The notes below the pieces were generated by a model, which was given only the letters and a program-made list of their open reading frames with translations, was not told the origin of the DNA and did not search any database. DNA of 63,928 nt, filler included, from Octopus bimaculoides (taxonomy: Eukaryota): assembly GCF_001194135.2 (NCBI RefSeq). It is 5 parts of 3 records of this genome, joined end to end, with 100 filler letters (N's around TTAATTAATTAA, not from the genome) between each part and the next. Parts side by side here need not be neighbours in the genome. Positions count along the whole stretch, not along the records: positions 29,241 to 46,530 come from NC_068989.1; 4 more parts are not named here. The stretch is one strand, 5' to 3'. The position numbers and the translations under genes are program-made. Shown in pieces: positions 6,858 through 46,132 of the stretch (within the stretch, counting starts at the first letter, position 1; the number at the start of each line of letters is the position of its first letter).

Positions 6858-7263
6858 AGCAGCATTCGACAACACCACGAATATAGTGTTATGTCTTCAA
6901 CAGACAAAGCCGCATATCACTAAAGCTCAAGAGTGCTGTTCATAATGCAATGGAAAACTTGCATAAAACTTGAATGCACGAGGAAAATATACCAACAATT
7001 TCAACATATTAGATTACAGAATGGTATGTTTTTATTGAATTTAGCCATTCGAAATATTCAATATTATTTGTAGGTTTCCAGTTATATTCCAATTAACACA
7101 TTTATGTATAATGTCATTTCATATGAGTAGTAATGTTAGTAATATTTGACACCGGAAAAAATATTTACCGGCATGTTCTGAGTTCGATGTAACCGACTAA
7201 CAACCTCCCCTAAAATTGCTGGCCTTGTGCTAAAATTTGAAATGAAATTTATTAATATTAGAT

Positions 7264-7470
7264 AAGGCGATGAGCTGGCATAGTCTTTAGCACACTAAAG
7301 TGTTAGCGGTATTTTTTTTCCATCTTTGCGTTCCGATTTCAAAACCTGCCGATTTTACCTTTCATTCTTTCTGAGTCAGGAAAATAAGGACAAGTTGAGA
7401 ACTGAGGTCGATGAAATTGACTAACGCCCGGCTACTGCCCAGAAACTGCTATCTTCGTGCCAAAGTTTTA
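7264..7470 (+). mobile_element. tRNA-headed SINE, diverged
   Basis: aaggcgatgagctggca...ttagcggtatt...tttcattctttc...gtcgat, the reverse complement of the family at 9684, 9930 and 45441. Confidence 0.7.
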
Positions 7471-8279
7471 ATCCGATTTTAGACAAAATCTATTCTCACA
7501 TCGCCAGACTTACACACATCAAGAAAGGAAAAATATCCTATCACTAGTGAGGCTTCAAACCAGAACATTAATGAAGTACAGAGTACTCTTCTCTGTAACG
7601 GCTGCTGACAAATCTTTTCTGTCTCTCTGGGTATTTTACCCGTATTTCTAAAGATGTTTTTACGGCTATTTTCTCCTGCGTTCGAAGTTACTTTCATTTC
7701 TAAAAACCAAAAACTATTAATGAGTTTAGTTTCTACGGATTGTTCTTTATTCCCAACTGAACAACGAAAGATTCGAAGACGCAAATATTACTGATAGTTG
7801 TTCAAATATATTTACTTACACAAGTTACATCGCATTTATCATATAGCATACTAACAATTCAATAAGTAACCATAAAAGGAGAAATACTGCGACAGCTGCC
7901 CGCAAGTAAAACAGATCTGTGGGAGGATAACAAGCTAAGTTGGCCTCTCCAGGATATAAGGTTGTATATAATGTTAATAGTATTACGAGAGAAACTGAAT
8001 ATAGCAAATGTTTCAATGATAAATATGACATATAAAAGATGTTACTATAATGCAATTATATTAATTTCAACACATGCGCCAAGTTCGAATGAACAAAGAA
8101 ATAAAAATAACAACATCATTAATATTTTTAACTGTCTAACACAATATAACATGTGTTAATGTCAGGTGAAATTGTAGTTATTTGCAGAATGTTTAGATGT
8201 TTATATTTTGAATTTTTCTGTCTAGAAGTTAATTTATAAACTTCTGTTGCAGCATACAACAATTTCAATTTTTCAAAGG

Positions 8280-8314
<35 letters not shown>

Positions 8315-8333
8315 GCCTTTCAAAAATTTAAAT

Positions 8334-8377
<44 letters not shown>

Positions 8378-8541
8378 CATATACATACATACATATATAT
8401 TTATATATACATATATATATATACATATACATACATACATATATATTTATATATACATATATATATATATACATATACATACATACATATATATTTATAT
8501 ATACATATATATATATACATATACATACATACATATATATT

Positions 8542-8602
<61 letters not shown>

Positions 8603-8693
8603 ATATATAGATAGATAGATAGATAGATAGATAGCTACTTATATACATACATACAAATATACATACTAATATATACACACATACATACACATG

Positions 8694-8743
<50 letters not shown>

Positions 8744-8806
8744 TGATGTATGGAAGTATATGTGTAGTATGTATTTATGTATGTATGTATGTATATTATA
8801 TGTACG

Positions 8807-8891
<85 letters not shown>

Positions 8892-9683
8892 ATGTATGTA
8901 TGTATGTATGTATGTATTATCTATCGCGATCAGTTGTAGTTCATCGTGTAAAAAGAGCGCTGATATATACGAAAGAGAAACCCGCAGCCACTTGGCTGAA
9001 ACACATAAAAAAAAAAAAAATAATAAATAAATAAATACGAATATATACGATTACAGAATTGTTCAAGCGTAGGGCTTGGTCTTGAAACAAGAAATTATGG
9101 ACGCTGGGGTTATTCTGTACGCAAAGCCTTTTGGCAACATATCGTGAAAATATGTTGCATGGTTTTGTGGACGTAGTTTAAGTAATCCTCGGTCCCACGT
9201 TACGCATTATGACTGATGCACGCGCTTGTGTCTTGCCTTCCGCTTGCTATACGGTGGTTTACATTTACGACGTTGTCTATCGCACCCACGAGCAAAAAAA
9301 TGTAATAACATTTGGAGAAACATTATTATTCTCACTGAAGAGTTCAAACAAAGCGCAATTTGCCAAATTTGCAACGATTAAGATATACGAATAATGAGTC
9401 AGACAATATAAACAGAGTATACGTTTCCTAGAGAATCAAAAGAAATTATTATTATTTAAACACAAACAATATGAGAGATCACTATATGGATCCTTTGTAA
9501 GCTAAAAATAGACGTCGAACCGTCTTACCACTATATCTGTATCCTCAACTTAGTAAGACGCTGTATTTTTACGAGCTAGACAAATGAAAAGAAATAAACA
9601 CAGCACTTAATTCCACGACTCGGACGTTTTTAATTATGCTGACTACTTTTCGCCCGGCGTTCACGATCCCAATACGTAAATGC

Positions 9684-9798
9684 TACTTATTTAATCGAGT
9701 CCGAAAGGATTAAAGGCAATGTCTACCTCAGCGGAATTTGAACTCACAATGTAGCAACGGCGTCCAGCACTCTAACAATTCTGCCAGCTCACCGCCTT
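9684..9798 (-). mobile_element. tRNA-headed SINE fragment
   Basis: gaaaggattaaaggcaatgtctacctcagcggaatttgaactc...ctgccagctcaccgcctt. Confidence 0.75.
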
Positions 9799-9805
9799 AA
9801 TAATA

Positions 9806-9844
<39 letters not shown>

Positions 9845-9929
9845 TCTACTGGAAGCACATGGCTCAAATTTGGGGGAAGCGATGAAGTCCATTCCATCGA
9901 CCCTAGTGTTAATTATTATTATTTATACT

Positions 9930-10140
9930 CTAGTAACACGGGCTTGAAAATTCTGGGGGAACAGGGCCACACAATTACATCAACCCCAGTGCAAAACTGG
10001 TAGTTATTTCAACGTCCCCGAAACAATGAAAGGCAAAGTCTACGTCGGCGGAATTTGAACTCAGAATGTAGCGACGGGCGAAATACTGCTAAACATTTCG
10101 TTCGTCCTGCGCGCTACGAAATCAGTCAGCTCACCGCCTT
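9930..10140 (-). mobile_element. tRNA-headed SINE
   Basis: atgaaaggcaaagtctacgtcggcggaatttgaactcagaatgtagcgacgggcgaaatactgctaa...cagctcaccgcctt. Confidence 0.8.
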
Positions 10141-10934
10141 AAAAATAATAATGATGATGATGATGATGATAATGATAAGTAGTAGTAGTAGTAGTAGTAT
10201 TGTAGTGAGGCCGAATACAAACACAGATTCCAGATGACTTTCTTATTGTTAGAACAATAAGTCTATTCTGTTGATTTATCTTATCACAAGATTTCAGATT
10301 TATTAAAGAAGTGAAAATATAAAAGGAAAATAAAACCATTATCCTAAACAGAATACACCATATGTAAATGTCAGAAAAGCGTTTCAGATGCTTTAAAATA
10401 AATAGGTTTTGTTCTTTTTTACGACAAAACACCATGCATTCTGAAACAATTCTTGAAAGTGTTGATACTTGTAAGCGTCTTCAGAATCCCCTCCTCTCTT
10501 TCTATCTCTATATCTACATAAGAATATATATANNNNNNNNNNNNNNNNNNNNNNNNNNNNNNNNNNNNNNNNNNNNNNNNNNNNNNNNNNNNNNNNNNNN
10601 NNNNNNNNNNNNNNNNNNNNNNNNNNNNNNNNNNNNNNNNNNNNNNNNNNNNNNNNNNNNNNNNNNNNNNNNNNNNNNNNNNNNNNNNNNNNNNNNNNNN
10701 NNNNNNNNNNNNNNNNNNNNNNNNNNNNNNNNNNNNNNNNNNNNNNNNNNNNNNNNNNNNNNNNNNNNNNNNNNNNNNNNNNNNNNNNNNNNNNNNNNNN
10801 NNNNNNNNNNNNNNNNNNNNNNNNNNNNNNNNNNNNNNNNNNNNNNNNNNNNNNNNNNNNNNNNNNNNNNNNNNNNNNNNNNNNNNNNNNNNNNNNNNNN
10901 NNATTCTTTCACCACAACTTTCTCTCACGCTTAC

Positions 10935-11139
10935 TTCCTGTTTCTGTTGTGTCTGTAATTCAAAGGGTCAGCCTTGTCACACTGTGTCACGCTGAATATC
11001 CCCGAGAACTACGTTAAGAGAACACGTGTCTGTGGAGTGCTCAGCCACTTGCACGTTAATTTCACGAGCAGGCTGTTCCATTGATCGGATCAACTGGAAC
11101 CCTCGACGTCGTAAGCGACGGAGTGCCAACAACAACAAC
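10935..11139 (+). mobile_element. SINE 3' half with (CAA)n tail
   Basis: Aligns by eye to 58140-58318 (gccttgtcac...gagaactacgtta...ttaatttcacgagcaggctgttcc...gacggagtgc). Confidence 0.85.
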
Positions 11140-11158
11140 ATAAATATGTAAATACATC

Positions 11159-11193
<35 letters not shown>

Positions 11194-11309
11194 GTGTGTA
11201 TGTGTGTGTGTGTGTGGGTATGTATGCTTTTATGTATATATATATGTATACAACCTCCATCGACATATGTATGTATATATAGATAGACACATATATACAT
11301 ATATTTTTT

Positions 11310-11465
11310 ATTTTTATATATAACGTTGACCACTAAAGTGGACATTTAATGTGCTAAAAATAGACCACATGTGTCTACTAAGACTTAAATTAGGTCTTAG
11401 ACACATGTGGTCTATTTCTAGCACATTAAATGTCAACTTTAGTGGTCATCGTTATATATAAAAAT
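11310..11465. mobile_element. Palindromic (foldback) MITE-like element
   Basis: ~70-bp arms (atttttatatataacgttgaccactaaagtggacatttaatgtgctaaaaatagaccacatgtgtct and its reverse complement), about 3 mismatches, short central loop. Confidence 0.8.
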
Positions 11466-33309: not shown

Positions 33310-35712
33310 TCCCTAAAACTCGAGAACTACACAACCAATTTCATTCAAATTTTACACATGTCTTACTTAGGCTTCTGGTTGTGCTTTAATCAAAAAATAA
33401 TTTTTTAACTTCTTGCAGAGTTCGAGCTCACGGCAACATAATATCTCCTCCACCATTTAAGTATTACGTGTTAAAAGTGAAACAAAAACNNNNNNNNNNN
33501 NNNNNNNNNNNNNNNNNNNNNNNNNNNNNNNNNNNNNNNNNNNNNNNNNNNNNNNNNNNNNNNNNNNNNNNNNNNNNNNNNNNNNNNNNNNNNNNNNNNN
33601 NNNNNNNNNNNNNNNNNNNNNNNNNNNNNNNNNNNNNNNNNNNNNNNNNNNNNNNNNNNNNNNNNNNNNNNNNNNNNNNNNNNNNNNNNNNNNNNNNNNN
33701 NNNNNNNNNNNNNNNNNNNNNNNNNNNNNNNNNNNNNNNNNNNNNNNNNNNNNNNNNNNNNNNNNNNNNNNNNNNNNNNNNNNNNNNNNNNNNNNNNNNN
33801 NNNNNNNNNNNNNNNNNNNNNNNNNNNNNNNNNNNNNNNNNNNNNNNNNNNNNNNNNNNNNNNNNNNNNNNNNNNNNNNNNNNNNNNNNNNNNNNNNNNN
33901 NNNNNNNNNNNNNNNNNNNNNNNNNNNNNNNNNNNNNNNNNNNNNNNNNNNNNNNNNNNNNNNNNNNNNNNNNNNNNNNNNNNNNNNNNNNNNNNNNNNN
34001 NNNNNNNNNNNNNNNNNNNNNNNNNNNNNNNNNNNNNNNNNNNNNNNNNNNNNNNNNNNNNNNNNNNNNNNNNNNNNNNNNNNNNNNNNNNNNNNNNNNN
34101 NNNNNNNNNNNNNNNNNNNNNNNNNNNNNNNNNNNNNNNNNNNNNNNNNNNNNNNNNNNNNNNNNNNNNNNNNNNNNNNNNNNNNNNNNNNNNNNNNNNN
34201 NNNNNNNNNNNNNNNNNNNNNNNNNNNNNNNNNNNNNNNNNNNNNNNNNNNNNNNNNNNNNNNNNNNNNNNNNNNNNNNNNNNNNNNNNNNNNNNNNNNN
34301 NNNNNNNNNNNNNNNNNNNNNNNNNNNNNNNNNNNNNNNNNNGATTCACTTGCAAAGTGTTGAGTAAAATTATTTCGTTGCAGACTTCCTTTGAGTCTTT
34401 TTATTACCACTGCGACACATATAGTTCCCAGTTGGTAACATTGATTTCAAGGCCTTCCCAGATGAGTGACTGGTTGTTCTAAGACATTTATTGATTGTAA
34501 ATATTTTCTGCCTAGTTACCTATCAGTATAGTGGTCATTTGCAAACTCCAGAGGCGACACTTTCATTTCCCTTTACTCCAAACGTCACACATTGTTGTTT
34601 CAATTGGGTCATGACCTTCCAATTGCTATAGATCCATAATGCATCTTAAAGCTGTGCCTGTCACCTGTATAGTGAGGAATCCTACATTGGAATCCTACGG
34701 TAGCTGACTGATTATCGTGATCATTCATCTTTTGCTTTCCTGTAGCTTTGCTCTCTTTTACAAAACCAGTGAACATACATACATTTCCTATTTCAAAGAA
34801 ATTCAAACAATACATATTACACACAAGTTAAAAAGATTCCCATCAATTAAACTTCTCTAGTTGACATTAATACACCTATCACCAATAGGGGCCTTAACTC
34901 CGACATTTTTCAGCTCCATGAGCTCCATTTTTCAGGAGCAAAATTCTTTTAGGGTCCATGTAGTGTCTTAGGTCAAAAAAATGTTTAACTTCCTGCATAG
35001 TTCGAGCCCACAGCAATCATATCTCCTCCACTATNNNNNNNNNNNNNNNNNNNNNNNNNNNNNNNNNNNNNNNNNNNNNNNNNNNNNNNNNNNNNNNNNN
35101 NNNNNNNNNNNNNNNNNNNNNNNNNNNNNNNNNNNNNNNNNNNNNNNNNNNNNNNNNNNNNNNNNNNNNNNNNNNNNNNNNNNNNNNNNNNNNNNNNNNN
35201 NNNNNNNNNNNNNNNNNNNNNNNNNCCTACGGTAGCTGACTGATTATCGTGATCATTCATCTTTTGCTTTCCTGTAGCTTTGCTCTCTTTTACAAAACCA
35301 GTGAACATACATACATTTCCTATTTCAAAGAAATTCAAACAATACATATTACACACAAGTTAAAAAGATTCCCATCAATTAAACTTCTCTAGTTGACATT
35401 AATACACCTATCACCAATAGGGGCCTTAACTCCGACATTTTTCAGCTCCATGAGCTCCATTTTGCAGGAGCAAAATCTTTTTTACAGGTTCCAGAAGACT
35501 GAAATTTTGGAATATGCGCATAAACATCAATAGTATAGGATACATGTCTCATGATTAGAATTTTTTATGGTGTGTAAAGAGGGAAAGAACCCTCATGTAC
35601 AATTTTGATGAAATTTGAATCATATGTATTCCAGTTCCTTACAGAAAATATAACAGAAAAGTCTCATTTTTCAATTGCATGTAACACGGGCAACGCCGGG
35701 TATCTCTGCTAG
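33240..35712 (+). mobile_element. Non-autonomous Helitron-like element with internal tandem duplication
   Basis: 5' A|TCTATATATATAAAAATGAG at 33240. 3' hairpin cgggcaacgccggg followed by CTAG|T at 35709-35713. Two gaps inside. Confidence 0.65.
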
Positions 35713-37569
35713 TGATTTCTAAATAGTCAATTATCTCAATGCTGGCAGAAAGATAGACATTTAACTCAACACCATAGTTAAATACAAAGCATTTAAACTG
35801 TTAATCTACTGATTCTGACACTGTCTTACAATAATAATGATTTCTTATATCAGCACAAGGTCAATAATTTGGAATGAGGAAACAATAGATTGATTACATG
35901 GACCTCAGTGTTTCACTGGTACTTATTTCATAACTCATGAAAGTATGAAAGGCAAAGTCAACCTTGGCAACATTTGAACTCTGAATATAAAGGCTGTAGT
36001 TAAACATCACTGATTCTAATATGGGCACAAGGCATAAAACCTTAGGGAGGGAGTAAGCTGATTAGACTGACTCCACAACATCTCTAGTATGTTATTTTAT
36101 CAAGCCAGAAGGATTAAAGGTAAAATTTAACTTGGTAAGATCTGAACTCAAACACTGCAAGATATTTTTTTTAGCTCTCTCATGATTCTGCTCAGAGCCT
36201 GATGATAACAATAAGAATAATAATTAGATGGAAACTATTCAACTTTCAATGCATTACATTTCATATAATTGATTTAAGTACTAATCTTTACATATTTTTA
36301 TTTCATTTTTTACTTCTTATATTAATTATTAATCACAAGTTTCACAAAATAAAAGAGTTGAATGTCTAGTATAGTTATATTTCAGATATTCCTACTTTCA
36401 GCTTGCAGAGTTAATGAGGTAGACAGTATAGAGTTTAAGTTTCAGATAGTAAGATAAAACAAAACACAGCAATGATGCTATGTTCTCAAGTGTAGAACAG
36501 CAGAAACCGTTTGCTGAAAAGTGATAGTTTACATGCTTGTTAGATGATATAGTAACCAGTCAGTATTTGACACTTTACATGGAGAAGAAATAAATATTTG
36601 TATACAGAAGCACTATTGTTTATACGAAAATAACTCAGTGTATAGAAAATATACACCTGCAGCTTATGAATGCTAAAGAGACTATTTTTTGTGGATGTTT
36701 TATTTTTTATTTTTTGTAGTATTTTTTGTTTATGCTTGTTATATTTTTTTTCTATTTCATAATTTTCACTCCCCTAACATTTTAACAAAATATAAATAAA
36801 ATAAAATAAAAGATTTTTATGGGGATATACTTACTTGGAGAAATTTACTCCAGAGTCAAATACAGACAGTACATAATTAAAATCCAAAAGCTCCCTTCAC
36901 CAAGCAGCTAAAAAGCTCGTGAAAAGATGGCACTCTTTTGCTCTCTCATGCAAACAATGCTAATAGAAGGTGAAATAGCTATGTTGGATGAGGCAGCTTC
37001 AGGTATCTCACTGACTTTTCAGGTTGGCAGCTCCCCAAACATAAGCAAGGCCAATCAGAGCGAGAAAGTAACAGTTTTATACATAACTGTAAACAGTGTT
37101 ACTCGCTAGCAGATATTGGCACCCTCATAGAATAGATCTCAATAGTTAGGAATGTCATTTAACTGTACAGTCTCTAGTTTCAGATTTGTGTTCTTTTTAC
37201 ACAAACAGGGTTATCAGATAGGATTCTTTGATACATTAGATTTGTCAACCCTGCTCTGAATTACTGCATGAACAAATATGTCACAAGCATTTGCCTACCA
37301 GCAAAAGCATCTATGAATAATAAACTTTACGGTATAATTACAAAATATATTGTAAATGGGTGAATGAAGCTCATATGCATTTATCCTTCAATAGATCTGA
37401 TTAAAACTTTTAATTCTACATTCTTCACCAAGATATGTAGGAAATATAATTCTTACATAACTTTTGAGGATGCTACATGTTATAGGATATTACATGTCTT
37501 AATCAAAAAGAGGGTAATAACTCAAGAATACATAATATATCACTAATAATAGAGAGAAATAACTAGGAA

Positions 37570-38884: not shown

Positions 38885-39025
38885 AAAGTAGCTTGCTTAC
38901 CAACCACATGGTTCTGGGTTCCGTCCCACTGCATGACACTTTGGGCAAGTGTCTTCAACTACAGCCTTAAGCCGACCAAAGCCTTGTGGGTGGATTTGGT
39001 AGATGAAAACTGAAAGAAGCCTGTC

Positions 39026-39030
<5 letters not shown>
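38885..39030 (+). mobile_element. tRNA-headed SINE fragment
   Basis: agtagcttgcttaccaaccacatggttctgggttccgtcccactgcatgacactttgggcaagtgtcttc...gaaaactgaaagaagcc. Confidence 0.8.
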
Positions 39031-39061
<31 letters not shown>

Positions 39062-39590: not shown

Positions 39591-41279
39591 AATATTGATA
39601 TTTCACCTTTCCTTATTTAGAAAAGCAATGCCAGCGACCTTCCCTTATAGACAGATGATTTCTATATTCAGCCTAAACTTCCCAAGGCTGATGGCTTTTT
39701 TGGAAAAATGTGGATTAGGTAGTAGTTTCAGAGGGTAACATTTCTGGGTAAGAGAAACTAAGAAAAATATTTAAAGAGACACAGAAATGCAGGAAAGTCA
39801 AGAGGTAGAAATTTGAGTGCTATAGGTAAGTTTGTCAGTTCAGAGAGGAGGGACCAATGTAGTAACAGTCGAAACTTAAGAATTTGTGAACTCATGGGTA
39901 TAAAGTGGGTTTGGTGAATAAGTTTTAGCCAATCTGCCATAAAGTCCTTTTCTGAATACAGCCATGAATGTATGCAGCAGCAATGTCCCATATATGTATG
40001 AGTAGTGCTCATGTGGATCACATTTGCTATGTGCATGTTTACATATGCTCATATAATGTGTATCTGTGTGTGCATACCAGTGTAAATTAATTCATCGAGT
40101 TGCAACCCTTAATGTTGCAAGTAATTTAGTATTTTGATAAATAATGATCAACAAAAATACCAGACTGAAATTAGTGTTGGAGCTGATGGCTCAACTAAAG
40201 GTGAAAGTGATAACCCAGCCCCACTAGTCTGAAACCAGAAAAACATTTTTTTTTTAATGTGAGGTAGCTACAAGGGATAACAAAAGGCCTAACATTTGTT
40301 GCAACATTTAAGCATTTTAGATGTGTGTTGTTCATGCATGTAAGTAGTGCACTGTCTTGTTGCAATTAAAGTGAACTAGAGTGTCATGTGTACGAAATGG
40401 TTGAAGTTTTTTAAGTTTATAAAATAGTGCAAGTTTATGCAAATCTAGTGTGAGGAGCACCTGTGTGAAGAAGCTTAAAGACTGAAGGATGATATCTCAG
40501 TATGATTGCATGTGGTTACAAATACTAGTAATATACAGAAAGAAGAATGTGGAAGAGATAAGTAAATGTTGATGAACCATGGTGATAAAAAATGTGATTC
40601 AGGGAAAGTACCATTGATGCAGGCAACAACAGAAAGTTCGACAGACAACTATCCAACAGACAAGAGGTATAAAGGGTCCATGGGCAGGAAAATCAGCTAT
40701 GAGATTCTAATACTAAACATAGTCAAAGCCTTTGTTGATGTCAAGGATAACATAGATAATATTAAATTTGACAAATGACTACTGGTGCATGACAAATATT
40801 GGAATGTGGGTCTCTGGTAGTATTGGTTCTTCAGAATCTGTACTTGTTATTGAGAAGTGAGACTTGTTGAAGGTGCCTTACATTCCCTTCATATAGAGCA
40901 GACCATGATCTGCAGCATAACAGATCAATGAAATGTGAAGAATTAGCAGAATATTGTTGTAAATGCTGAGGTGAAATAAGAATACAAGTGAATGTGTGGA
41001 TGTGTACCAGTATGTGTATGTAACCAGGTATGAACAAATGAAAGTCTAAATTGAATTAAAACAATTTAGACAGATATTAATAGTTATCACCAAGCTAACA
41101 TGGCAGTCCAGAAAAATAGGACGAATGCTGCTATTGAACAGATGGTCAGTAGCGACACCTGCTCGGTTCGGCTGCTCTACATTGATAAGGGGCAAATACC
41201 CTGAAACTTGGAGCGAATCAACGGCAGCATTCGTCATATTTTTCTGGACTGCTTGGCGATAACTATTAATATCAGTACT

Positions 41280-41352: not shown

Positions 41353-43784
41353 TAGAAGGTTATAATGGACATAGCTAGCTAGAGGTGATGGTCTCTTGGA
41401 GTTAATCAATGGTAGCATTCGTCCTATTTTTCTGGGCTGCTTGGTGATAACTATTAATATCCAGTACCGCTGCTGTAGTCTCCTTTAGAGAGACTTAGAA
41501 ATATTAATATTTCTAATTTAGACAGAAAGTCACAGATTGAGAATTCATTAAATACCAACTTACTGAATACTACAAATATATCAATGTTCTTTCAATTATT
41601 TTTTATAGCTTAGTCATTTGAGAAGGTGTTGTGTACAGAGGTCTAGCAAAAAGAAAAAGACAAAAGAAATGAAAAAAAAAAACCAGAGGACTGGTTCAGA
41701 GGCCTGTAATAAAGTGAACTCTTCTTAGGCACCTAAAGAGGAGGTCTTAAGCAAGGCGATGGAATATGTCTGCCACTCAACAACTGTTTTCATCTACCTA
41801 ATTTTATGGAGTCTATAGGTGTCAATTCTTCCTAAAGTGTTGTGTAATGGTATCATATCTAGAAGAATATTACTACAAAGCTAATTTCTTAACCACACAG
41901 TCATACCAGCAGTATGATGCATAAAAATTTGTAAACTTCAAAAGTGTAGCACATCAACCTGTAGATAGACTAGCTCAGCAAGTAGTAGATAGGTATCTTA
42001 TTGTGGTACAACTCATTGCATGTAGTAGAATAGTGTGTAACTTGTGTATTTTGTAAGCTTCAATCATTAAGTTCAACTCAAGAGAAATACTTGAGAGAGA
42101 GAGAGAGAGAGAGCGAGAGGTCATAAACATTCAATAATGGAGGAGACAAAATATAGACAGCAGGTAAAGTAACTAGCTAAGCATTATCACTAATACATTC
42201 TGCTTTTAATTTGATAGAATTATTACATCATGGAAACTCTAGAAGAATGACAGGAATTGTATAGAAAACATGGAGTCCATAAAAAAATAAGGAGATCAGT
42301 AGGGAACCTGTATAAGAGTGATATGATCTATGGAGAAAATATAGGGTTGGAGGAAGAGATGGGATCTGTGAATGAGTGAACTGTGGATGGGGTGATGCAA
42401 ACTGAGGTGGAGAAAAATGAACAAGAGGAGAGATACAAACCATGAATGATGAACCATGAGACAATAACACATTGTTGAGGAATGATATAAAGCTTAAGTG
42501 AAAATTGATGATGATATTGTCAGCTTGTATAATAAGTTACAAGTAGTATAGTGAGATGAAAATGCATGTAATGCAAGTGCACAGAAATGTAAGTGGACAG
42601 AAAGATGTAGCGAGGGGAGAAGGCAGTGCGTGTGTGGTAGGAAGCATCTAGTGTTATTAAGTGACAGAAGATGCAAATGTATGAGAGAAAGAGCATATCT
42701 GTGTATGGAAGAAGCATGAACAATAGTATGTGTGAGAACATACAAATATGATGTGTGAAATAAAGTGCGGGCGTGTATGTATGTGAGTAATAGAAGACAA
42801 TCTTTTTAGGTATGTGTGTGAGTGTATGTGCACATACATACAATCATTCAAGTGTGTATGTGTGAGCCCATAATCAAGAATGTGTGTGAAAGAAAAAGAG
42901 ATAGTGCATATATGCATGATGGTATGACAAAATGGTTAAGAAGTTCACTTTATAATCATGGCATGATGGGTGTGTTGTCTCATAGCCTAGACTTAACCCT
43001 TAACCTCAGGAATGAAATTGAGTAGAAGGGAAATTGTATGGGAACTCATCAGATGGACTATACTTATTATCCAAAGATCCAGCATTATTTCTCACAGTTC
43101 CATGCTGATTCTGGCTAAGTATTATGTTAAAGGCACAATTCTCTATGAACTACTCAGCTACTAAACAAACTGGAATACTCATCATAGAAACTCATGGTAT
43201 ATGAGAGATGCTTAAACATATATACATATATGTTTCTGCATTTCTGTAGACAATTAACTCTGTGTGCATAAGCATACATAACAGTATGTGCATCCTGCTC
43301 TCTCTGCTTTTAATGTCCATTTTTCCACAATTCAGTGGATAAGACAAAATTTGATGAAGTAGATATTTATATGGCTGGATGAACTTCCTGTCATCTGTTC
43401 CCATGTAAAGTAATCATTCCCTAAGTCCTTCAAACATAAACAGAGTAATGGTTGGATTTCTTTTCATGAATAATGACAAAAGAATGACATTGCAGGTATG
43501 ACAGTGCAGTTTCTACATAGCTAGTATGCCCTATTGAGACAACAGGACATAAACAACACCACCTTCCTAATACACACACAAAGATACATATACATATATA
43601 CAAGCTACTTTCAGATTCAGTTTACCAAAGCCACTCACAAGGCTTAAGTCAGCCAGAATAAGAACAGCAATAACAATAGGGCTTTTCTATAAGTAAGTTA
43701 TCTCCCTTGGCTAGGTAGCGCTCCATGTAGACAATTAAACTTCCGCAGACTATCCACGCTATTGTTATTGTTTTACATCTTATC

Positions 43785-44042
43785 ATGGTACTTATCGAAG
43801 TACTTACTGTGCCTGAGTTAAAGAAATATTTAAGATTATATGGACAGTATGTTACTGGAAGAAAGGCGGACTTGACTGAAAGGCTGAAAGGTATAAAAAT
43901 TCTGTCAATGAAGAATGTCAACAGAGTAAATTCATTGGACGATAAGTCTGAAGTATCGGACGATACTTCAGACAGGAATAAGCAGAAGCTTATATCTCCT
44001 CTCGGTGAAGTATTGCCTGATCCCAATCTGCTTTCAGCATAG
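43785..44042 (+). CDS. SAP-domain ORF (85 aa), likely N-terminus of the transposon accessory protein
   Basis: LTVPELKKYLRLYGQYVTGRKADLTERL fits the SAP consensus (V.ELK..L...G...G.K..L..RL). Confidence 0.7.
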   Translation: MVLIEVLTVPELKKYLRLYGQYVTGRKADLTERLKGIKILSMKNVNRVNSLDDKSEVSDDTSDRNKQKLISPLGEVLPDPNLLSA

Positions 44043-45026
44043 CTTTCAGCAACCATTCACTGATTTGGCCATGAGCATGATGAGGTGTAGAAGAGTTAGG
44101 GACAGTCACACTATAAAGTCTAATAATTAGAGGAATATTAGATTCAATGCTGTAAATTTATTATTTAATCAAACAAACACAGACACACACACACACACAC
44201 ACACACACANNNNNNNNNNNNNNNNNNNNNNNNNNNNNNNNNNNNNNNNNNNNNNNNNNNNNNNNNNNNNNNNNNNNNNNNNNNNNNNNNNNNNNNNNNN
44301 NNNNNNNNNNNNNNNNNNNNNNNNNNNNNNNNNNNNNNNNNNNNNNNNNNNNNNNNNNNNNNNNNNNNNNNNNNNNNNNNNNNNNNNNNNNNNNNNNNNN
44401 NNNNNNNNNNNNNNNNNNNNNNNNNNNNNNNNNNNNNNNNNNNNNNNNNNNNNNNNNNNNNNNNNNNNNNNNNNNNNNNNNNNNNNNNNNNNNNNNNNNN
44501 NNNNNNNNNNNNNNNNNNNNNNNNNNNNNNNNNNNNNNNNNNNNNNNNNNNNNNNNNNNNNNNNNNNNNNNNNNNNNNNNNNNNNNNNNNNNNNNNNNNN
44601 NNNNNNNNNNNNNNNNNNNNNNNNNNNNNNNNNNNNNNNNNNNNNNNNNNNNNNNNNNNNNNNNNNNNNNNNNNNNNNNNNNNNNNNNNNNNNNNNNNNN
44701 NNNNNNNNNNNNNNNNNNNNNNNNNNNNNNNNNNNNNNNNNNNNNNNNNNNNNNNNNNNNNNNNNNNNNNNNNNNNNNNNNNNNNNNNNNNNNNNNNNNN
44801 NNNNNNNNNNNNNNNNNNNNNNAACATTAAAACAATTTCAATGTATTTATTATTTGAATGCAAAATACCTGTACATCAACACAACAATTATTAGATTAAA
44901 CATTCGTGTTTAGCCCAACGTACACCACTCAAATTTGTTTCCCTCTTGAATTTTAACATGTTCTAATCTGTTAATGAGGAGATAAATCAAAGAGAAATTT
45001 CACTCATCTACTAACTGCGTATATGA

Positions 45027-45305
45027 TCATGCACTTACTGATATTTTAAATACTTTGTTTGGAAAAACGGATGGCAAGGGGTGATCTTTCGATAGTCCAT
45101 TAAAATTGACGAAATGCTGGGAACACATTTGGCTATTTGCAGTGTAAACAAAGTCTTTCCTCACAAGTCTCGATCTCTGAAGCCAAATACGATGAATAGC
45201 TACGTTTGCAGGATATCTATGTAGTGAAATAACTTTGGCGTCTACATTCTTCCCTCTATAGTGGCTGCATATACAGCAGTATTCGTGTGATTTCTTTGGA
45301 GACAT
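45027..45305 (-). CDS. THAP zinc-finger ORF/exon, likely N-terminus of the transposase
   Basis: YCCIC...LHRYP...W...MCSQHF...LPSVFP is the C2CH THAP signature. A GTAAGT donor follows ...FKIS. Confidence 0.85.
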   Translation of the reverse strand: MSPKKSHEYCCICSHYRGKNVDAKVISLHRYPANVAIHRIWLQRSRLVRKDFVYTANSQMCSQHFVNFNGLSKDHPLPSVFPNKVFKISVSA

Positions 45306-45440
45306 ATTAATCGGTCAGTACAGTATGTGAGTCGTCTGCGGAAGTTAAAGCAAGTCACTGAGCATGCGTACATGTCATACGGGAGAATTCCAATCAGGGG
45401 TGGATAACAACCTTATAGGAACCCCCTATAGTAATAACCC

Positions 45441-45647
45441 TTCTACTATAGGCACAAGGCCTGAAATTTAGGGGAGGGGATAATCGATTAAATCGACCCA
45501 GTAGTCAACTGGTACTTATTTTATCGATCCCAAAAGTATGATAGGCAAAGTCGACCTCAGCAGAATTTGAACCCAGAATATAAAGACGGACGAAATATCA
45601 CTAAGCATTTTGCCCGGCATGCTAATAATTCTGCCAGTTTGCTGCTT

Positions 45648-45648
<1 letters not shown>
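45441..45648 (-). mobile_element. tRNA-headed SINE
   Basis: ggcaaagtcgacctcagcagaatttgaacccagaatataaagacggacgaaatatcactaagcattttgcccggcatgctaa. Confidence 0.85.
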
Positions 45649-45702
<54 letters not shown>

Positions 45703-46132
45703 TGCAGCAGCAGTAGTAGTAGTAGTAGTAATGGTTTCAAATTTTGGCTCAAGGCTAGTAATTTCAGGGAGGTGTTACATCAATTTCTTCAAGTCCAATG
45801 GGTACTTATTGTATCGACCTCAAAGAAATAATGATGATGATGATGATGATGATCATAATAATAATAATAATAATATAGAAACCACAGAGTACCAGAGAAT
45901 ACCGATAAAGTAACTAATGAACACAATCTGGATGGACATGTAATAGTAAGGACAGCACAAGATTTGAATGATGAAGAGGAGATTTTAGAAATGTTGTGAG
46001 GTAAAATGTCTGATGGGGAAAATGAGAGGCGCCCAGCCATCATTCATCTGAGAGTCCTTCTACAGAATGTCCTCAAATTTCTATACAGCATATTTTGCTT
46101 TTTTTCTTCCAGTATATAAGCAACAATTACAT

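What the first reader, a model, noticed from the sequence alone, without database searches (positions are those of the whole stretch)
43678..45427. Compact ISL2EU-like transposon retaining two convergent DNA-binding ORFs (SAP and THAP)
Seen: ~25-bp imperfect TIRs starting AGGG, AT on both flanks, an open SAP ORF reading inward from the left and an open THAP ORF reading inward from the right. No DDE or exonuclease sequence is visible. Established: ISL2EU (PHIS superfamily) elements have AT target duplications and encode a THAP-containing DDE transposase plus a YqaJ-type exonuclease. Inference: the SAP ORF is the N-terminus of the second protein, and this derivative kept only the two DNA-binding modules. 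It may be a repressor-like or domesticated form, since both domains are stop-free in a window where every other transposon ORF is shattered.
Basis: partly seen in the sequence, partly recalled or inferred. Interest (0 to 1): 0.75.

Follow-up and report, generated by a model that had tools for sequence, protein, structure and literature searches.

The report
Broken ISL2EU transposon copy in octopus
This is an ordinary, internally broken copy of a two-gene ISL2EU "cut-and-paste" transposon in an octopus genome; it keeps its two ends and the first exon of each gene because those exons lie right beside the ends, not because they have been put to a new use.

Summary
Terminal inverted repeats sit at 43678-43702 and 45403-45427, with AT on both flanks. 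A SAP ORF reads inward from the left and a THAP ORF from the right; both pass Pfam's gathering scores. No DDE or YqaJ sequence is visible.

The family assignment is also right. An intact 4.56-kb relative in the mussel Sinanodonta woodiana has the same termini and two convergent genes: THAP-HTH-DDE_Tnp_4 (507 aa) and SAP-SWIM-YqaJ (565 aa). The window's THAP ORF equals exon 1 of the first gene and ends at the same GTAAGT donor. The SAP ORF equals residues 9-84 of the second.

The "repressor-like or domesticated" reading is not supported.
- The SAP exon is truncated: it matches only positions 12-88 of a 205-position exon-1 profile and ends at a TAG inside a 12-bp tandem duplication.
- The N-terminus lacks 7 family codons.
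- The TIRs are retained.
- Octopus bimaculoides carries many paralogous short fragments.
- Simulation shows both ORFs stay open by chance in 20-58% of cases at 2-6% divergence.

Neither ORF reaches the gap.

Verdict: a non-autonomous deletion derivative of low interest.

The parts
43676..43677 (.). Left flanking AT (putative 2-bp target-site duplication)
   Evidence: Read. The same 'AT' precedes AG.. at all six ends compared in octopus, Sinanodonta and Pinctada. The alternative reading of TA + GGG cannot be excluded without an empty site.
43678..43702 (+). Left terminal inverted repeat, AGGGCTTTTCTATAAGTAAGTTATC
   Evidence: It aligns with the SAP-side termini of the mussel elements L001 and L004.
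43738..43750 (+). Subterminal conserved block AACTTCCGCAGAC, 35 bp upstream of the SAP ATG. It is probably a promoter or transposase-binding element.
   Evidence: 2 matches, 0.21 expected. CTTCCG is invariant in all six ends of alignment A5. Function is inferred.
43785..44042 (+). SAP ORF (85 aa): a truncated exon 1 of the SAP-SWIM-YqaJ second gene
   Evidence: Pfam SAP 25.7 bits. 46% identical to P0017 residues 9-84. Matches exon-1 profile positions 12-88 of 205 only. 87-99% identical to O. bimaculoides paralogues. Lacks 7 codons of the family N-terminus: MDIKQLDDSA has become MVL.
44030..44053 (+). 12-bp tandem duplication (gctttcagcata / gctttcagcaac) whose junction creates the TAG stop at 44040-42. 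Homology to the ancestral exon ends here.
   Evidence: Sequence; loss of profile match after this point.
44043..44209 (.). Interior sequence left of the gap. It is non-coding, has no similarity to relatives, and ends in a (CA)n run (~44184-44209) that abuts the gap.
44210..44822 (.). Assembly gap (613 N, length only estimated); content unknown
44823..45032 (-). Remnant of intron 1 of the THAP-DDE transposase gene: non-coding sequence downstream of the donor
   Evidence: Lies beyond the conserved donor. No coding similarity. The intron is 470 bp in L004.
45033..45038 (-). GTAAGT splice donor ending THAP exon 1
   Evidence: Same position as the annotated donor of the P0018 gene in L004.
45039..45305 (-). 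THAP exon 1 of the transposase gene (89 codons). If unspliced, the ORF runs on to the stop at 45027.
   Evidence: Pfam THAP 28.5 bits. 71% identical to P0018 residues 1-89. 79-94% identical to O. bimaculoides paralogues. One private change, P to L in NGLSKD, falls at a site invariant in the other five sequences.
45334..45346 (-). Subterminal conserved block AACTTCCGCAGAC, 29 bp upstream of the THAP ATG. A GCATGCGT box (NRF1-like) lies at 45362-45369.
   Evidence: Function is inferred.
45403..45427 (-). Right terminal inverted repeat, AGGGGGTTCCTATAAGGTTGTTATC
   Evidence: The blastn alignment of 45033-45427 to L004 11074-11464 (69%) ends exactly at both termini.
45428..45429 (.). Right flanking AT (putative target-site duplication)

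Best explanation
The feature is a non-autonomous, internally deleted copy of a mollusc ISL2EU (PHIS superfamily) DNA transposon in an octopus genome, O. bimaculoides or a close relative.

The autonomous form is about 4.5 kb and carries two convergent two-exon genes that read inward from the termini. One encodes a THAP-HTH-DDE_Tnp_4 transposase; the other encodes a SAP-SWIM-YqaJ protein. Each first exon starts about 100-120 bp from its terminus.

This copy has lost its middle. That most likely happened by abortive gap repair after excision, which is an inference. It kept the TIRs, the subterminal regions, all of THAP exon 1 and the first ~45% of SAP exon 1.

It cannot make a transposase or an exonuclease. 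It could move only if an autonomous copy supplied both in trans. The two short ORFs are open because the copy is young and the ORFs are short, not because they are under selection.
For: Shown:
- The termini are homologous to both ends of the intact Sinanodonta element L004 (6901-11464, 4564 bp) and to L001. All have AT + AGGG...TTCC.ATAAG.
- L004 encodes P0018 (THAP+HTH_Tnp_4+DDE_Tnp_4, 507 aa) and P0017 (SAP+YqaJ, 565 aa, named SWIM-type) in convergent orientation. Pinctada locus L005 has the same layout.
- A read-through of L001 gives DDE_Tnp_4 102.9 bits, HTH_Tnp_4 41.7 bits and YqaJ 51.3 bits.
- The window's THAP exon equals P0018 residues 1-89 and ends at the same donor.
- The window's SAP ORF equals P0017 residues 9-84. 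The rest of the 182-codon exon is absent from all frames of 44040-44209.
- There is no DDE or YqaJ in the visible sequence.
- At least 15 different short O. bimaculoides gene models carry these exons at 79-99% identity, with varied junctions.
- Substitution-only simulation keeps both ORFs open with probability 0.58 at 2%, 0.33 at 4% and 0.20 at 6% divergence.
- The literature definition of ISL2EU matches.

Inferred: the deletion mechanism, mobilisation in trans, and an element length of ~1.75 kb, which depends on the gap estimate.
Against: - The 613-N gap is only an estimate and could hide more element sequence.
- The join of the two contigs was not verified with reads.
- No octopus consensus DNA or autonomous octopus copy could be retrieved. 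No cephalopod protein appeared among the best 120 DDE/YqaJ hits, so the exact deletion breakpoints and the source of transposase in octopus are unknown.
- No dN/dS could be computed, because only protein sequences of the paralogues were available.
- No empty site was found in the piece.
Confidence: 0.72

Rival explanations
1. A longer, possibly near full-length, ISL2EU copy whose middle is hidden because the gap length is underestimated. The loss of homology at 44040 would then be due to a nested insertion or local damage.
For: The gap length is only estimated. A (CA)n run abuts the gap, which is a typical assembly breakpoint. Some octopus gene models join the SAP exon to the next segment (QQLRSGIFYHDRHVH...SADCNC), so longer copies exist in the genome.
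Against: About 3.6 kb is missing relative to L004, against an estimate of 613 bp. SAP exon 1 is already broken by a stop and by loss of homology 170 bp before the gap, so the copy is defective in any case.
Confidence: 0.12
2. A scaffolding artefact: the left end of one copy and the right end of a different copy of this multi-copy family were joined across the gap.
For: The family is multi-copy. AT is uninformative as a shared duplication. The join could not be checked, and no empty site was found.
Against: The two ends are in the correct convergent orientation, at a plausible distance. The joined flanks read as one continuous AAT/AAC-like low-complexity tract...aataacaAT|agtaataac....
Confidence: 0.08
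3. A functional truncated element. The THAP-only peptide (92 aa if unspliced), the SAP peptide, or both bind the family's ends and repress transposition, as the KP derivative does for the P element. Alternatively they have been domesticated by the host.
For: The THAP C2CH residues and the SAP core are intact. Conserved promoter-like subterminal motifs are retained upstream of both ATGs. The unspliced THAP ORF stops 3 codons after the donor. A precedent exists from general knowledge: KP repressors are THAP-containing deletion derivatives.
Against: The TIRs are retained and there are many paralogues, so this is not a single-copy domesticate. The SAP ORF has a premature stop, an N-terminal 7-codon loss and private substitutions, and the THAP ORF has a P to L change at an otherwise invariant site. 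Openness is expected by chance. There is no expression or selection evidence.
Confidence: 0.05

Closest known systems
ISL2EU elements of the PHIS superfamily (Han et al. 2014, PMC4122938; Han et al. 2015, PMC4482050; Repbase ISL2EU)
   Same: AT on both flanks. G-rich TIR start. The first exon is homologous to a THAP-HTH-DDE_Tnp_4 transposase, and the second gene is homologous to a YqaJ-domain protein. The genes are convergent in intact relatives, and the autonomous size is ~4.5 kb against a published mean of ~4.84 kb.
   Different: This copy has no DDE and no YqaJ in the readable sequence. The TIR starts AGGG rather than the 'usually GG' of the paper. [quoted passage not shown] I found no cephalopod ISL2EU in the searchable literature.
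Intact Sinanodonta woodiana element (L004; proteins P0017 and P0018)
   Same: Same terminal sequence (AT|AGGGC.TTCC.ATAAG), same subterminal ACTTCCG box, same exon 1/intron 1 boundary, 71% identity in the THAP exon and 46% in the SAP exon.
   Different: The mussel element is 4564 bp with both genes intact. The window copy retains only ~530 bp of the left arm and ~605 bp of the right arm around a gap.
KP-type P-element deletion derivatives of Drosophila (from general knowledge, not tested here)
   Same: An internal deletion leaves the N-terminal THAP DNA-binding domain as a short ORF next to an intact terminus.
   Different: KP is a demonstrated repressor that has spread in populations. Here there is no evidence of expression, spread of this exact form, or repression.
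Non-autonomous PIF/Harbinger derivatives (Tourist-like MITEs)
   Same: Same superfamily and the same logic: the ends are kept, the middle is lost, and movement depends on transposase supplied in trans.
   Different: MITEs are usually under 800 bp with no coding remnant. This copy is larger and still carries two exon remnants.

Membership tests
ISL2EU (PHIS superfamily) | 2-bp AT target-site duplication | tested here: inconclusive
   AT flanks both ends here and in L001, L004 and L005. All ends read AT-A-G.., so TA + G.. is an equally possible parse. No empty site was found.
ISL2EU (PHIS superfamily) | Terminal inverted repeats, usually starting GG | tested here: met
   25-bp TIRs, 19/25 identical, starting (A)GGG, with 0 matches expected by chance.
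ISL2EU (PHIS superfamily) | Transposase with THAP + HTH + DDE_Tnp_4 | tested here: inconclusive
   Only THAP exon 1 is present in the readable sequence. The DDE may be deleted or lie in the gap. The homologous exon in L004 belongs to the THAP-HTH_Tnp_4-DDE_Tnp_4 protein P0018.
ISL2EU (PHIS superfamily) | Second ORF with a YqaJ exonuclease domain | tested here: inconclusive
   No YqaJ in the readable sequence. The SAP ORF is homologous to the N-terminus of the SAP-SWIM-YqaJ proteins P0017, P0019 and P0037.
ISL2EU (PHIS superfamily) | Sequence homology of the ends to an autonomous ISL2EU element (the criterion for a non-autonomous member) | tested here: met
   45033-45427 aligns to L004 11074-11464 at 69%, ending at both termini. 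The left TIR and subterminal block align with the SAP-side ends of L001 and L004.
Domesticated transposase-derived host gene | Loss of TIRs, single-copy orthologous locus, intact ORF under purifying selection | tested here: not met
   TIRs are retained. Many paralogues exist in O. bimaculoides. The SAP exon is truncated by a stop. Selection was not measurable because no paralogue DNA was available.
KP-like repressor-producing deletion derivative | Expressed truncated DNA-binding protein that inhibits transposition | not testable with these tools
Only the intactness of the ORF can be stated.
MITE | Short (under ~800 bp), no coding capacity, high copy number of a uniform form | tested here: not met
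   At least 1137 bp are readable, and two exon remnants remain.

The most novel reading that the evidence does not exclude
Deletion derivatives of this octopus ISL2EU family, which retain promoter-bearing ends and the THAP and/or SAP first exons, are expressed. They would act as KP-like competitors for the transposon ends, giving a self-limiting regulator of the family. The three near-identical O. bimaculoides models that share the same truncated SAP exon (P0006, P0007, P0009) would then mark an amplified repressor subfamily.
Probability: 0.05. Interest if true: 0.5.

Novelty: new member of a known kind. Interest (0 to 1): 0.13.

Why it matters
It matters little beyond annotation. The finding documents that octopus genomes carry an ISL2EU family. 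It also shows that the second ISL2EU protein in molluscs has a SAP-SWIM-YqaJ architecture, with the SAP module encoded right next to the terminus. It is a useful caution: short open ORFs next to transposon ends are the expected residue of internal deletions and should not be read as domestication. If truncated THAP or SAP peptides turned out to regulate transposition, this would extend the KP-repressor principle from P elements to the PHIS superfamily. Nothing here argues for that.

Tried and rejected
- Fetching octopus copies by exact protein look-up: the window's THAP ORF, its SAP ORF, the antisense 135-aa ORF, P0006 and P0014 were all not on record.
- The metagenome scan with the THAP alignment gave one locus (L003). 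It is GC-rich with only a 30-residue match. I judged it irrelevant and did not pursue it.
- I tested whether the gap flanks overlap, which would make the gap spurious. The result was not significant.
- Paralogous empty site within the piece: only partial SINE-like matches appeared, none spanning the insertion point.
- Interior segments 44043-44209 and 44823-45026: blastn found no match to the rest of the piece or to relatives.
- A weak tblastn hit at 39878-39979 (E 0.003) comes from a non-coding frame of L001. I rejected it as noise.
- A possible continuation of the SAP exon in the +1 frame (PFTDLAMS compared with GWTDSLLS or PNFTD) looked suggestive by eye. The exon-1 profile search did not support it.
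- dN/dS was not computed, because only protein sequences of octopus paralogues were obtainable. The mussel comparison is too diverged (~69% nt) to inform on this copy.
Full report
**1. What is in the sequence**

The element runs from 43678 to 45427.

- The left terminus is AGGGCTTTTCTATAAGTAAGTTATC. The reverse complement of the right terminus is AGGGGGTTCCTATAAGGTTGTTATC. They agree at 19 of 25 positions.
- The shared pattern occurs only at these two places in the window, with none expected in shuffles.
- A second inverted block, AACTTCCGCAGAC, lies 60 bp inside the left end and 81 bp inside the right end.
- AT flanks both ends.
- An 85-codon ORF (43785-44042, +) passes Pfam's SAP gathering score (25.7 against 23.9 bits).
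- A 92-codon ORF (45305-45027, -) passes the THAP score (28.5 against 23.9 bits) and has the C2CH residues.

**2. The gap**

The gap is 613 N at 44210-44822.

- Neither ORF reaches it. The SAP ORF stops 167 bp before it and the THAP ORF stops 204 bp after it, so nothing in this report depends on a frame across the gap.
- The left edge of the gap is a (CA)n run, a common cause of assembly breaks.
- The two edges do not overlap significantly.
- The only support for the join is indirect. The two sides carry complementary ends of one family in the right orientation. The outer flanks, once joined, read as one continuous AAT/AAC-like low-complexity tract.

**3. Organism and copy number**

Both ORFs hit short UniRef gene models of Octopus bimaculoides. 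Four THAP models match at 79-94% identity and eleven SAP models at 87-100%.

- The family is therefore multi-copy in that genome, or in a very close relative.
- The SAP models share an N-terminus, MDIKQLDDSAIEVL. The window copy has MVLIEVL, a net loss of seven codons.
- Several models join the SAP exon at different points to a further segment, (QQLRSGIFYHDR)HVHSIEYHDVSESCSHC...SADCNC.
- One model (P0149) fuses a SAP fragment to unrelated host exons.

This variety is what a population of decaying, variously deleted copies looks like to a gene predictor.

**4. The autonomous relatives**

A search with the mussel sequences found intact protein pairs in bivalves.

- In Sinanodonta woodiana, locus L004 carries an element of 4564 bp (6901-11464).
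- Both its ends are bounded by AT followed by AGGGCATTCCAATAAG.
- It holds two convergent, two-exon genes.
  - P0017 (565 aa) has SAP, a SWIM-type finger and YqaJ. Its exon 1 covers residues 1-182.
  - P0018 (507 aa) has THAP, HTH_Tnp_4 and DDE_Tnp_4. Its exon 1 covers residues 1-89.
- A second, decayed Sinanodonta copy (L001) and a Pinctada locus (L005) have the same layout.
- The literature defines ISL2EU by AT duplications, a THAP-HTH-DDE transposase and a second YqaJ protein, with a mean autonomous length of ~4.84 kb.

**5. How the window copy maps onto the intact element**

- The right arm, 45033-45427, aligns at the DNA level to L004 11074-11464 (69%). The alignment ends exactly at both termini.
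- The THAP ORF is 71% identical to P0018 residues 1-89.
- The GTAAGT at 45038-45033 occupies the same position as the annotated donor in the mussel.
- The left TIR and subterminal block align with the SAP-side ends of L001 and L004.
- The SAP ORF matches P0017 residues 9-84 (46%).
- I built a profile from exon 1 of seven relatives (205 positions). It matches the window only at positions 12-88. None of positions 89-205 is found in any frame of 44040-44209.
- Homology ends at the TAG at 44040-42, which lies at the junction of a 12-bp tandem duplication.
- No DDE, SWIM or YqaJ remnant is visible anywhere in the piece.

**6. Interpretation**

So is the inference that the SAP ORF is the N-terminus of the second protein.

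What is not supported is the step from 'both ORFs are open' to 'repressor-like or domesticated'.

- The two first exons begin 107 and 122 bp from the termini, so any internal deletion that spares the ends will keep them.
- The SAP exon is not intact. It has a premature stop, loses homology after ~45% of the exon, and has an N-terminal 7-codon loss.
- The THAP exon has a private P to L change at a site invariant in the other five sequences.
- TIRs are retained and paralogues are numerous, which is the opposite of domestication.
- The copy is young. It is 94-99% identical at the protein level to its closest paralogues.
- A substitution-only simulation keeps both ORFs open with probability 0.58, 0.33 and 0.20 at 2, 4 and 6% divergence.

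The most likely mechanism is an inference from general knowledge of DNA transposons. It is an internal deletion arising during gap repair after excision, leaving a non-autonomous element that can move only with transposase, and perhaps the YqaJ protein, supplied in trans.

**7. Open points**

- The gap could hide more of the element. About 3.6 kb would be needed for a full copy against an estimate of 613 bp, and the SAP gene is already broken outside the gap.
- The join could be a mis-scaffold.
- The duplication can be parsed as AT+AGGG or as TA+GGG. Only an empty site would decide, and none is in the piece.
- No cephalopod DDE or YqaJ protein appeared among the 120 best hits. I could not show that an autonomous source exists in octopus.
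- No dN/dS or expression test was possible.

**8. Verdict**

It is a new member of a known kind. I found no cephalopod ISL2EU in the searchable literature. Interest is low. The only more novel reading left open is a KP-like repressor role for the truncated THAP and SAP peptides. I rate that at about 5%.

Noticed in passing
window 43738-43750 and 45334-45346; L004 and L005 ends (alignment A5): CTTCCG, inside an ACTTCCG motif that looks like an ETS site, is invariant in all six subterminal regions of the octopus, Sinanodonta and Pinctada elements. It lies 29-35 bp upstream of each ATG in the window copy. A GCGCATGC-like (NRF1-like) box sits on the THAP side in octopus, Sinanodonta and L002. These look like conserved promoters, or transposase-binding sites, built into both ends.
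   Followed up: partly
window 45033-45427 vs L004 11074-11464: There is 69% nucleotide identity over ~395 bp, including the non-coding 5' region and the terminus, between an octopus element and a freshwater-mussel element. That is high for lineages this far apart. It suggests strong constraint on the ends, or horizontal transfer among molluscs.
   Followed up: no
L002 (JGI metagenome contig, 4011 bp) 617-2936: A relative in which the THAP exon and the HTH_Tnp_4 part are followed directly by the SAP/pre-SWIM ORF on the same strand. In intact elements the two genes are convergent. This is a rearranged or deleted derivative, or a chimeric contig.
   Followed up: partly
protein P0121 (530 aa, ENA, 43 member sequences): A single polypeptide with SAP, THAP, HTH_Tnp_4 and DDE_Tnp_4. 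Here the SAP module sits on the transposase itself rather than on the YqaJ protein.
   Followed up: no
protein P0149 (278 aa, octopus-like): A gene model that fuses a SAP fragment and the pre-SWIM segment of this transposon to unrelated cysteine-rich, transporter-like host exons and an acidic tail. It is probably an annotation chimera caused by a transposon fragment inside a host gene.
   Followed up: no
window 43584-43653 and 45440-45640; also ~35889-35992 and 38971-39044: The element is flanked by fragments of other interspersed repeats that recur in the piece (SINE-like by my recollection of octopus repeats, not tested). The insertion point lies in a short AAT/AAC-like low-complexity linker between them.
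   Followed up: partly
window ~45648-45740 and 44184-44209: There is a long (TAG)n microsatellite just right of the element and a (CA)n run at the left edge of the gap. The (CA)n run is the probable reason for the assembly break.
   Followed up: no
window 33490-34342 and 35035-35225: Two further assembly gaps (853 and 191 N) lie in the same piece.
   Followed up: no
L001 10921-11740 vs L004: Sinanodonta holds an intact copy (L004) and a decayed copy (L001). L001 has in-frame stops in the transposase and a broken SAP exon, so the family has been active over a long span in that genome.
   Followed up: partly
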